In this document: positions 50,900 through 52,521 of the stretch, piece after piece | How positions within the stretch are numbered: the stretch's first letter is position 1 | Layout of the letters: every line of letters begins with the position of its first letter | DNA from: Asterias rubens | Lineage: Eukaryota | Length of the DNA: 64,000 nt | Assembly (NCBI RefSeq): GCF_902459465.1 | Contig: NC_047079.1 | Span: 1,674,001 to 1,738,000, forward strand | Direction of reading: 5' to 3' | Notes under the pieces: generated by a model | What the model was told of the DNA's origin: nothing | The model's database searches: none | The model's input: the letters and a program-made list of their open reading frames with translations, nothing else | Made by a program: the position numbers and the translations under genes

Positions 50900-51124
50900 G
50901 CAGAGGAGATAAATGCCATTGTGGGTAAGGCGTTTAAAGTTGCCTACGCTAGCCTCCGCAGTAAGAAACAATTCTTTGAGCTAATGGAGGAGCTGAACCG
51001 TGAACAGGAAGAATACTTCGCTCAGATCACGCGGCAGCAGAACACAGCAGCGGTTGTTGAAGACTGGATGGATGGTGACATCAACAGGGAAAGAGTGCTC
51101 TCTGTTGGCCAAGGACGAGTCTGG
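50900..51124 (+). CDS. SH2D5: SH2D5-like exon 5, PTB C-terminal helix and linker (AEEINAIVGKAFKVAY...GQGRVW)
   Basis: cctgcag| acceptor; AFxVAY is the PTB terminal helix; TGG|gtaggt donor in phase 0; inside ORF 50882..51142. The exact donor is less certain because its 3' part is duplicated downstream. Confidence 0.85.
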
Positions 51125-52521
51125 GTAGGTACACGTTTATGACTTTACCTCAATGCAGTTATAGCGCCCTCTATTGACATGTGGCAAGAGTTGTTGAATC
51201 TTAGGCTCAGATATAAGACATCAATGTGGACAGTGTGCTCTCTATCAGCAAAAGGAAGGGTCTGGGTAGGTACTTGTTTGTGACTTCACTTGTATGCAGT
51301 TATAGTGCCCTCTACTGATATGTGGCAAATGGAAAAGTTTGCATTCTTGAAGTTCTGTGGTGCTACATGTAAGTCCAATTAGAGGCATAAAAAGGAAAGA
51401 GAACAACATTTGAGCTGTAGAGTTTGCACCTTTTGCGCTTCAAGCATTTTCAGGAATTGTGTTACATGTATAGGCATGGATGGAGACAACAACAGAGACC
51501 AAGGCCCGGTCTCGGTAGGTACTTGTTTGTGACTTGTTTGTGACTTCACCTGCAGTTAAAGCGCCCTTTAATGATGTGTGGCAAGTAAAAAGTTTGCATT
51601 CTAAGGCTACTTAGGTGCATAATTGATTAAGGAAACAGAACAAAAAGCCTTTATTGAATTGTGGAAAGCATTGTCAAGATTTGTATAAGACAGTGTGCTC
51701 TGTCGGCCAAGGACAGGTCTGGGTGCACTTATAGCCCCCTCTATTGGTTGCAAGCATCATCAGGAATTGTGTATTAGGCATGGATGGATACCTCAACAGG
51801 GGGCTCTCTGTCAAGGACAGGTCTGGGTAGGTACTTGTTCGTGACTTCTCCTGAATGCTATCAATAGCACCCTCTATTTGAATGTGGCAAGCATTTTGTT
51901 TTGACTTGTACATGGCAATGGTGGACTGGTAAAATCAACAGGGATTATGTGTTAAATGTCTGCCAGGGTTGGTAAGGTTCAATAGTGTTCAGCAATAGCG
52001 CCCTCTCTTGGAAAGTGATGAGTTAAATGTTTAGACTTGTATAAGGCAGTGATGGTGACTTCAACACGGGACAAGGTGCTTTCTGTTTAGTTAGGCAAGG
52101 AATGGTTTAGATACATTAGGTACGTACACTGGTATGTGACATCAACTGTGTTCAGTAATAGCACCCTCTCTTGGCAAGCATTATGTGTAGTCTTGTATGA
52201 GGCATTGACAAGGTGCTTTCTGTTGGCAAGGACCAATGGTGGTCTAGGTAGGTACATGTATGTGATCACCTATGTTCATTTATAGCGCCCTCTATTTGAA
52301 TCTGGCAAGCTTGTACAGTATAACTCATGGATGGTGACACCCACATTGGACAAGGTGGCCTCTTTTGGGCAAGGACTGGTTGAGGCATGTACAGTACACT
52401 GGTACATGTATGTGTATAGCGCCCTCTAGTGGAATTTGGCAAGCATTCTGTTCAGACTTTGCAAGGCATCGATGGAGTCCATCAATAGGGACAGGGTGTT
52501 CTGTGTCAGCAAAGAGTAGGG
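51060..52521 (+). repeat. Degenerate ~130-250 bp tandem array derived from the exon 5 end + donor + CTCF-like motif (~10 units)
   Basis: Recurrent blocks ATGGATGG.GAC...CAAGGAC...TCTGGGTAGGTAC...TAGCGCCCTCT...TGGCAAG. Motif cores at 51162, 51303, 51559, 51732, 51865, 51996, 52159, 52283 and 52417. Confidence 0.85.

What the first reader, a model, noticed from the sequence alone, without database searches (positions are those of the whole stretch)
51060..52521. Array of nine same-orientation CTCF-like motifs, each paired with a copy of the exon-5 end and splice donor
The array starts inside coding exon 5. Each unit repeats the last ~60 exon bases, the donor (GGGTAGGTAC or a variant) and then TAGCRCCCTCTNNTGG. 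The unit at 52417-52432 reads CCACTAGAGGGCGCTA on the minus strand, a near-consensus CTCF core (established motif CCACCAGGGGGCGCTA). Units differ greatly in length and sequence, yet this core is the best-kept block (8 of 9 retain TAGCNCCCTCT or TAGTGCCCTCT), which hints at selection. Inference: an intragenic insulator or loop anchor made by amplifying an exon/intron boundary. It also supplies a series of decoy 5' splice sites that could couple CTCF-dependent pausing to donor choice.
Basis: partly seen in the sequence, partly recalled or inferred. Interest (0 to 1): 0.78.

Follow-up and report, generated by a model that had tools for sequence, protein, structure and literature searches.

The report
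Splice-donor minisatellite carrying CTCF-like words
In the starfish Asterias rubens, a ~135-base piece spanning the end of a coding exon, its splice signal and a nearby CTCF-type DNA word was copied about ten times in a row inside an intron; this is a real, old and probably harmless repeat of a known kind, and I found no evidence that it works as an insulator or splicing switch.

Summary
Window 51060-52522 holds 9.5 diverged head-to-tail units of 124-256 bp. Each unit descends from the last ~60 bases of exon 5, its donor and ~75 intron bases, and all nine full units carry TAGCGCCCTCT or a variant.

The window is Asterias rubens. The gene is a PTB+SH2 adaptor (LOC117302283).

- **Age.** A. amurensis has the same nine units one-to-one. 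Patiria and Acanthaster have none.
- **Splicing.** RNA contigs from three runs end exon 5 exactly at the first donor. The four other intact GTAGGT donors show no use, as in the human F7 intron-7 minisatellite.
- **Motif among paralogous units.** It is the best-kept block: 5% pairwise difference against 32% elsewhere, permutation p about 0.02.
- **Motif between the two Asterias species.** It changed as fast as its flanks: 5/99 against 32/884. Its CpG decayed like flank CpGs: 3/7 against 12/23.
- **CTCF match.** Only unit 9 matches the full CTCF core.
- **Literature.** Published echinoderm data show no orientation-dependent CTCF looping.

My verdict is a donor-seeded minisatellite that co-amplified a pre-existing CTCF-type site. 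The insulator and splicing-switch roles are unsupported.

The scan has already noted many donor-seeded arrays elsewhere in this genome (RUVBL2, TRIM37, EMSY and others). One of them is also said to carry a CTCF-like motif.

The parts
50900..51124 (+). Coding exon 5 of the PTB+SH2 adaptor gene (A. rubens LOC117302283). Its last ~60 bases are the founder of the exon-like part of the units.
   Evidence: It translates to AEEINAIVGKAF...SVGQGRVW. It is 100% identical to the Asterias protein and 81-84% identical to Acanthaster and Patiria. RNA contigs of three runs cover 50898-51125 and continue into other exons.
51125..51130 (+). The authentic 5' splice site GTAGGT. It is the only donor seen in use.
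   Evidence: Contigs of 3254, 2896 and 387 nt end their match here. Patiria has the same donor; Acanthaster has a one-base variant (GTGGGT).
51060..52522 (+). Diverged tandem array. Nine full units run 51060-51192, 51193-51333, 51334-51589, 51590-51762, 51763-51895, 51896-52026, 52027-52189, 52190-52313 and 52314-52447; a truncated tenth runs 52448-52522.
   Evidence: Repeat families and the multiple alignment show the units. Each unit pairs one-to-one with a unit in A. amurensis L002 at about 43217-44790.
51162..51176 (-). CTCF-like core of unit 1 (TAGCGCCCTCTATTG on the + strand), 38 nt after the real donor.
   Evidence: 2 mismatches to the degenerate CTCF core.
51303..51317 (-). Core of unit 2. 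Its CpG decayed to TpG in A. rubens only.
51559..51573 (-). Core of unit 3 (AAGCGCCCTTTAATG), the most degenerate copy.
51732..51746 (-). Core of unit 4 (TAGCCCCC...). In this unit the donor part is deleted.
51865..51879 (-). Core of unit 5 (TAGCACCC...). Its CpG was lost before the species split.
51996..52010 (-). Core of unit 6.
52159..52173 (-). Core of unit 7. Its CpG decayed to CpA in A. rubens only.
52283..52297 (-). Core of unit 8.
52417..52432 (-). Core of unit 9, the only full match to the CTCF core (CCACTAGAGGGCGCTA on the minus strand). It is degraded to TAGATCCC... in A. amurensis.
51266..51271 (+). Silent pseudo-donor GTAGGT of unit 2. Others lie at 51515, 51827 and 52248.
   Evidence: No contig joint or contig end falls at these places. 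Using one would read into the in-frame TGA at 51140-51142.
52523..52878 (.). High-copy foldback (MITE-like) insert that truncates the tenth unit. It is not part of the array.
   Evidence: Inverted repeat arms lie at 52711-52777 and 52805-52871. Contig depth is about 10^4, against less than 10 in the array. It is absent at this place in A. amurensis.
60422..60730 (+). Exon 6 (AKQVAGRIQHKQPH...). Intron 5 is therefore 51125-60421, and the array fills its first 1.4 kb.

Best explanation
This is a lineage-specific minisatellite of the F7 intron-7 type, seeded at an exon end and its splice donor. In an ancestor of Asterias, a segment of about 135 bp was amplified in tandem to about ten copies. The segment held the last ~60 bases of exon 5, the donor, and the first ~75 intron bases, which already carried a CTCF-type word 38 nt after the donor. 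This happened after the split from valvatid sea stars and long before A. rubens and A. amurensis separated. Only the first copy serves as exon end and donor. The later copies are decaying pseudo-junctions inside intron 5, and their donors stay silent, most simply because the splicing machinery takes the first donor after the exon. Amplification turned one intronic protein-binding word into a same-orientation cluster of nine. That word was protected far better than the rest of the unit for most of the array's history, which points to binding by sea-star CTCF or a similar zinc-finger protein. Since the species split, the copies have drifted at the neutral rate, as expected for redundant sites. 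Shown here: the array, its origin from the junction, its age, the silent donors, and the two conservation patterns. Inferred: protein binding. An insulator, loop-anchor or splicing-switch role is neither shown nor needed.
For: The array and its units are established. The exon end and donor are ancestral and conserved in Patiria, Acanthaster, sea urchins and sea cucumbers, so the exon is the source and not an exonised repeat. Patiria and Acanthaster have no array in the orthologous intron. A. amurensis has all nine units. Each A. rubens unit is closest to its orthologue (distance 0.01-0.09), while its nearest paralogue is at 0.21 or more, so there has been no turnover or homogenisation since the split. 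RNA contigs of three runs end exon 5 at 51124/5, and only low-depth unspliced pieces lie in the array. The exon-like parts have lost the reading frame. The human F7 IVS7 37-bp minisatellite has the same layout, and its pseudo-donors are silent because the most upstream site is selected (PMC1557585). Among paralogous units the motif is the best 11-base window: identity 0.89 against a mean of 0.51. Pre-split pairwise difference is 5% against 32%, with p about 0.017 for any window and 0.0004 for this window; base composition does not explain it. The same word recurs without flank homology in the last intron of the gene, and GCGCCCTCT occurs far more often than composition predicts in all four sea-star loci, so it is a genuine genomic motif. 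The vertebrate CTCF motif is the top motif of constitutive open chromatin in sea star and sea urchin (PMC13317027).
Against: Protein binding was not tested. The paralogue conservation test is only moderately significant once any window is allowed (p about 0.02). Between the two Asterias species the motif shows no constraint: 5/99 against 32/884 changed, motif CpGs 3/7 against flank CpGs 12/23, and non-CpG motif sites 1/85 against 58/1635, which is not significant. A long-protected motif that lost protection in both lineages is awkward for this reading. Past short-tract gene conversion anchored on the core could imitate protection. Assembled contigs drop rare isoforms and transcripts removed by nonsense-mediated decay, so low-level use of the pseudo-donors is not excluded.
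Confidence: 0.6

Rival explanations
1. The array is a working homotypic cluster of CTCF sites, acting as a local boundary, a constitutive open-chromatin platform or a polymerase-pausing site. Selection for several sites keeps it; the exon and donor copies are passengers.
For: The motif is the best-kept block, and no unit has lost it by deletion, although donors and exon-like parts were deleted in several units. The motif CpG survived in 7 of 9 units up to the species split despite 21% or more divergence from the nearest paralogue; my rough calculation gives p about 0.004. A GCGCCCTCT site lies within about 1 kb of exon 5 on the sense strand in Patiria and Acanthaster too. [quoted passage not shown]
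Against: There has been no constraint since the A. rubens/A. amurensis split, and the best site, unit 9, is destroyed in A. amurensis. Only 1 of 9 units fully matches the core and 3 are poor. Echinoderm CTCF shows no orientation rule and no loop-anchor enrichment, and invertebrate orthologues insulate weakly.
Confidence: 0.17
2. The bound motif caused the array. A tightly bound protein stalled replication forks or attracted breaks, and repair produced local tandem duplications. Each new copy added another barrier.
For: A second place in the same gene, the last intron, carries the same 15-mer at +37 of its donor and is also tandemly duplicated, with copy number differing between the two Asterias species. 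In A. amurensis the tenth unit stops exactly where the motif would begin.
Against: Donor-seeded arrays are noted in many genes of this genome without any such motif. Patiria has an array of ten or more units seeded in the last exon of this same gene with no motif. The intron-5 array has not changed its copy number since the species split.
Confidence: 0.08
3. The array is a fully neutral minisatellite, and the kept core is chance or a by-product of recombination anchored on the longest identical block. Nothing binds it.
For: The between-species rate equals the flank rate, and the permutation p is only about 0.02.
Against: The same word recurs independently elsewhere in the gene and in other sea stars. 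It matches the motif most enriched in constitutive sea-star open chromatin. The CpG was retained before the split.
Confidence: 0.12
4. The array is a splicing device: alternative donors, cassette pseudo-exons, or selector RNA structures as in arrays of mutually exclusive exons.
For: There are four further intact GTAGGT donors, and an AG lies directly before each core.
Against: Only the first donor appears in transcripts of three runs. The frame is lost and there is an in-frame stop 15 nt after the donor. RNAalifold finds no shared pair at all. No Rfam family reaches its gathering score.
Confidence: 0.03

Closest known systems
Human F7 intron 7 (IVS7) 37-bp VNTR minisatellite (Borensztajn et al. 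2006, PMC1557585)
   Same: The first repeat unit spans the exon/intron boundary, so the authentic donor is followed by a series of identical pseudo-donors that stay silent, and the most upstream site is chosen.
   Different: Here the units are about 135 bp rather than 37 bp. They are old and strongly diverged (21-58% apart). The array is fixed and collinear in two species, and the units carry a preferentially kept CTCF-type word. Copy-number polymorphism was not tested.
Tandem-repeat-borne clusters of CTCF sites in vertebrates (the DXZ4 macrosatellite, the repeats of the H19/IGF2 imprinting control region, and clustered same-orientation sites at boundaries); named from my own knowledge
   Same: One CTCF-type word sits in each repeat unit, all in one orientation, because the sites were multiplied by tandem duplication.
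   Different: Occupancy is demonstrated for those clusters and is untested here. This array is intragenic, derives from a splice junction, and lies in an animal where CTCF shows no orientation-dependent looping. The sites show no constraint between sister species.
Other donor-seeded arrays noted in this same genome by this scan (RUVBL2, TRIM37, EMSY, haspin, DZIP1)
   Same: They share the layout of exon end plus donor amplified in tandem inside the following intron. Follow-up agents judged them harmless minisatellites.
   Different: This one, and reportedly s1-150936, carries a CTCF-like word that is kept better than the rest of the unit. I could not read those other loci.

Membership tests
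Exon-end / splice-donor minisatellite (F7 IVS7 type) | The tandem array's first unit spans the exon/intron boundary. | tested here: met
   Similarity of later units to the exon starts at about 51060-51067, inside exon 5 (50900-51124).
Exon-end / splice-donor minisatellite (F7 IVS7 type) | Downstream units repeat the donor sequence. | tested here: met
   GTAGGT lies at 51266, 51515, 51827 and 52248. It is degenerate or deleted in the other units.
Exon-end / splice-donor minisatellite (F7 IVS7 type) | Only the most upstream donor is used. | tested here: met
   Contigs of three RNA runs end at 51124/5, and there is no joint at the pseudo-donors. Contigs cannot exclude rare isoforms.
Exon-end / splice-donor minisatellite (F7 IVS7 type) | Copy number varies among individuals. 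| not tested
Between species the unit number is unchanged.
CTCF site cluster / insulator | Sequence match to the CTCF core motif. | tested here: inconclusive
   Against a degenerate consensus that I wrote from memory: unit 9 has 0 mismatches, unit 2 has 1, four units have 2, and three have 3 or more. The window gives 13 hits against 2.4 expected. No curated matrix was available.
CTCF site cluster / insulator | Motif under purifying selection. | tested here: inconclusive
   Among paralogues it is kept: 5% against 32% difference, p about 0.02. Between orthologues it is not: 5/99 against 32/884.
CTCF site cluster / insulator | The motif CpG is protected from methylation-driven decay. | tested here: not met
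   Since the species split 3 of 7 motif CpGs changed, against 12 of 23 flank CpGs.
CTCF site cluster / insulator | CTCF occupancy, open chromatin, and an insulation or loop signal. | not testable with these tools
   No ChIP, ATAC or Hi-C access. The literature reports no orientation rule and no loop-anchor enrichment in echinoderms.
Dispersed satellite or transposon | Copies of the unit elsewhere in the genome. | tested here: not met
   Outside the array, neither the 64-kb window nor the 77-kb locus holds another match to the stretch 50000-53500 or another copy of the core, apart from the last-intron sites. Contig depth is below 10 in the array, against 10^4-10^5 in the neighbouring repeats. 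The whole genome was not searched.
Array of alternative (mutually exclusive) exons with selector RNA structures | Units keep the frame and acceptors, and conserved RNA pairing is present. | tested here: not met
   The frame is lost. There are zero consensus pairs. The units show only low-depth unspliced pieces and no spliced use.

The most novel reading that the evidence does not exclude
Sea-star genomes multiply splice junctions into arrays very often. Where a CTCF-type site happens to lie a few dozen bases behind the donor, this process creates ready-made multi-site clusters that the cell then keeps. The same 15-mer lies at +37/+38 of two different donors of this gene, both duplicated, and a site lies near exon 5 in three genera. 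Together these would then mark a donor-proximal class of CTCF-type elements tied to co-transcriptional processing or to local fragility.
Probability: 0.12. Interest if true: 0.65.

Novelty: new member of a known kind. Interest (0 to 1): 0.35.

Why it matters
By itself this is one more donor-seeded minisatellite, a layout known from human F7 and apparently frequent in this starfish genome. Its modest value is as a natural experiment. One intronic CTCF-type word was multiplied nine-fold tens of millions of years ago. The copies can be followed one-to-one in two species, and they show long protection followed by neutral decay. Because the role of CTCF in echinoderms is under active debate, a fixed nine-site, one-orientation cluster inside a gene is a convenient place to test whether sea-star CTCF binds, insulates or pauses transcription at all.

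Tried and rejected
- **Conserved RNA structure around the donors.** RNAalifold on the nine units gave no pairs.
- **Known RNA families.** Nothing in the array reached a gathering score.
- **Tandem Repeats Finder.** It missed the array because the units are too diverged.
- **The motif as part of a mobile element shared with the last-intron site.** Flanks on both sides are not alike (z mostly below 2).
- **Base composition or GC-biased conversion as the cause of motif conservation.** G/C and A/T columns outside the motif differ equally, 0.33 against 0.32.
- **The unit as a dimer, with the motif half descended from the exon half.** Similarity is marginal (z about 2, p 0.04-0.06), so I keep it only as a lead.
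- **Pfam on the exon peptide.** No hit. The gene was identified through orthologues instead.
- **Exact look-ups of proteins P0001 and P0017.** They returned no locus; the isoforms P0010 and P0042 worked.

Full report
**What is there.** Reading 50700-52900 shows a coding exon followed by a series of look-alike segments.

- A pattern search finds the core TAGYRCCCTYT seven times, all on the + strand between 51162 and 52427, against 0.17 expected by chance.
- Allowing two mismatches adds 51559 and 51732, giving nine copies.
- Repeat finding and a multiple alignment show that the whole stretch 51060-52522 consists of nine full units of 124-256 bp and a truncated tenth.
- Each unit has an exon-like part, a donor-like part, about 37 bases, the core, and about 45 more bases.
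- Tandem Repeats Finder does not report the array because the units are too diverged.

**Organism and gene.** The exon translates to AEEINAIVGKAF...SVGQGRVW.

- A full-library protein search finds echinoderm proteins with an N-terminal PTB/PID domain and a C-terminal SH2 domain. Sources name them SH2D5-like or EGFR adapter protein.
- The exon peptide is 100% identical to the Asterias protein.
- The A. rubens locus L003 (GCA_902459465.3, LR699109.1) is 100% identical to the window over 3.5 kb. The window is therefore A. rubens, with window position = L003 position + 8310.
- Exon 5 is 50900-51124. Exon 6 starts at 60422 after a clean acceptor. Intron 5 is 9.3 kb, and the array fills its first 1.4 kb.

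**Which came first, exon or repeat.** The exon came first.

- The exon end ...VGQG/S(R/K)VW followed by AKQ... is conserved in sea stars, sea urchins, sea cucumbers and hemichordates.
- Patiria has the same donor (GTCTGG|GTAGGTAC) and Acanthaster a one-base variant (GTCTGG|GTGGGTAC), each followed by unrelated single-copy intron sequence. Neither has an array or a core within three mismatches there.
- The junction is therefore ancestral and the array is a derived amplification of it, not an exonised repeat.

**Age and stability.**

- The A. amurensis locus L002 aligns collinearly through the array at about 96% substitution identity and has all nine units.
- Each A. rubens unit is closest to its own orthologue (distance 0.01-0.09). 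Its nearest paralogue is at 0.21-0.39.
- The array was therefore complete long before the two species separated. It has neither gained nor lost units since, and it has not been homogenised.

**Splicing.** I laid contigs of four RNA-labelled runs on 49000-54900.

- Long contigs of 3254, 2896 and 387 nt match 50898-51125 and then continue into other exons.
- No contig ends or joins at 51266, 51515, 51827 or 52248, where intact GTAGGT donors stand.
- The array carries only short, low-depth, unspliced contigs (depth 0-9), similar to other unique intron stretches.
- Reading past the real donor meets a TGA after five codons, and the exon-like parts of later units have lost the frame.
- The known parallel is the human F7 intron-7 minisatellite. 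Its first unit spans the boundary, and its pseudo-donors are functional but silent because the most upstream site is chosen (PMC1557585).
- Contigs cannot exclude rare or quickly degraded isoforms.

**Is it a common repeat?** No.

- Outside the array, neither the window nor the 77-kb locus holds another match to the stretch or another copy of the core.
- Contig depth in the array is below 10, while the neighbouring dispersed repeats reach 10^4-10^5.

**The motif.** Against the degenerate CTCF core, which I wrote from memory, the units score as follows:

| Mismatches | Units |
|---|---|
| 0 | 9 |
| 1 | 2 |
| 2 | 1, 4, 6, 8 |
| 3 or more | 3, 5, 7 |

- What all units share is ATAGCGCCCTCT followed by a T at the third next base. 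The terminal TGG is kept in four units.
- The word is a real genomic motif rather than an accident of this array. The identical 15-mer stands in the last intron of the same gene in A. amurensis, and with one change in A. rubens, with no flank similarity to the intron-5 unit.
- GCGCCCTCT occurs in every sea-star locus fetched, far more often than composition predicts.
- In sea star and sea urchin the vertebrate CTCF motif is the top motif of constitutive open chromatin and is enriched at TAD boundaries. It shows no orientation pattern and no enrichment at loop anchors. Echinoderm CTCF has lost two zinc fingers and evolves fast (PMC13317027).
- Two recent preprints report weak insulation by invertebrate CTCF orthologues.

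**Conservation, two ways.**

- *Among the nine paralogous units.* The core is the best-conserved 11-base window, with mean pairwise identity 0.89 against 0.51 overall.
  - Using only sites where the two species agree, pairwise difference is 5% in the core and 32% elsewhere.
  - Column permutation gives p = 0.018 for any window. A permutation stratified by base class gives 0.017 for any window and 0.0004 for this window.
  - G/C and A/T columns outside the core behave alike.
- *Between the two species.* The core changed at 5 of 99 sites and other well-aligned columns at 32 of 884.
  - Motif CpGs changed in 3 of 7 cases and flank CpGs in 12 of 23.
  - Non-CpG motif sites changed at 1 of 85 against 58 of 1635, which is not significant.
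  - Unit 9, the best site in A. rubens, is destroyed in A. amurensis. Units 2, 3 and 7 have decayed in A. rubens.
- The core was therefore protected for most of the array's history, but no protection is visible since the species split. Redundancy among nine copies would explain that. Past short-tract conversion anchored on the core is an alternative.

**No RNA-level role found.** RNAalifold on the nine units predicts no shared pair. No Rfam family reaches its gathering score in the array.

**Context in this genome.**

- Earlier notes of this scan list many donor-seeded arrays in A. rubens (RUVBL2, TRIM37, EMSY, haspin, DZIP1 and others). Follow-up agents judged two of them harmless minisatellites and named the F7 parallel.
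- One other note mentions a CTCF-like motif in such an array. I could not read those loci.
  - In Asterias, the last intron repeats the ends of both flanking exons. It carries the 15-mer at +37 of the donor and differs in copy number between the two species.
  - In Patiria, ten or more units are seeded in the last coding exon, with no such word.
- Amplification of junctions therefore does not need the motif.

**Verdict.**

- The structure is a donor-seeded minisatellite that co-amplified a CTCF-type site lying just behind the donor.
The origin by junction amplification and the preferential keeping of the word hold.
- The insulator or loop-anchor idea and the coupling to donor choice are not supported by any test I could run.
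- Binding and chromatin effects remain untested.

Noticed in passing
L003:73010-73621 (A. rubens) and L002:70373-70840 (A. amurensis), the last intron of the same gene, outside the window: A second junction array. The end of the penultimate exon, and the acceptor plus the first ~65 bases of the last exon, are repeated inside the intron. The 15-mer TAGCGCCCTCTATTG lies at +37 of the donor. A. rubens has three unit copies and A. amurensis has two.
   Followed up: partly
L001:47696-48693 (Patiria miniata): Ten or more tandem units of 83-94 bp are seeded in the last coding exon of the orthologous gene (...DLDYTSRTDFKPVMAGMK stop) and run into the 3' UTR. They carry no CTCF-like word.
   Followed up: partly
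window 52523-52878: A high-copy foldback (MITE-like) insert with arms at 52711-52777 and 52805-52871 truncates the tenth unit. A. amurensis has 1.1 kb of other sequence there, and its tenth unit stops exactly where the core would begin. One A. rubens run contig leaves the window sequence at 52522, which suggests an indel polymorphism.
   Followed up: partly
L001:27989 (Patiria, intron 4, 475 nt before exon 5); L004:21039 (Acanthaster, intron 5, about 1 kb after exon 5): A sense-strand GCGCCCTCT site lies within about 1 kb of exon 5 in all three genera, at different positions. This may be turnover of one site around this exon.
   Followed up: no
window 51094-51108: The coding sequence for RVLSVGQ is itself within two mismatches of the CTCF core on the minus strand. 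The exon-like and motif halves of the unit are weakly alike (p 0.04-0.06), so the motif might descend from the exon sequence. This is not established.
   Followed up: partly
window 51075-51083: Asterias exon 5 has nine extra bases (DIN) compared with Patiria and Acanthaster. The array units carry them too, so the insertion predates the amplification.
   Followed up: no
window 49985-50380 and 53137-53930: Very high-copy dispersed repeats flank the region, with contig depth up to 10^5 in all four runs.
   Followed up: no
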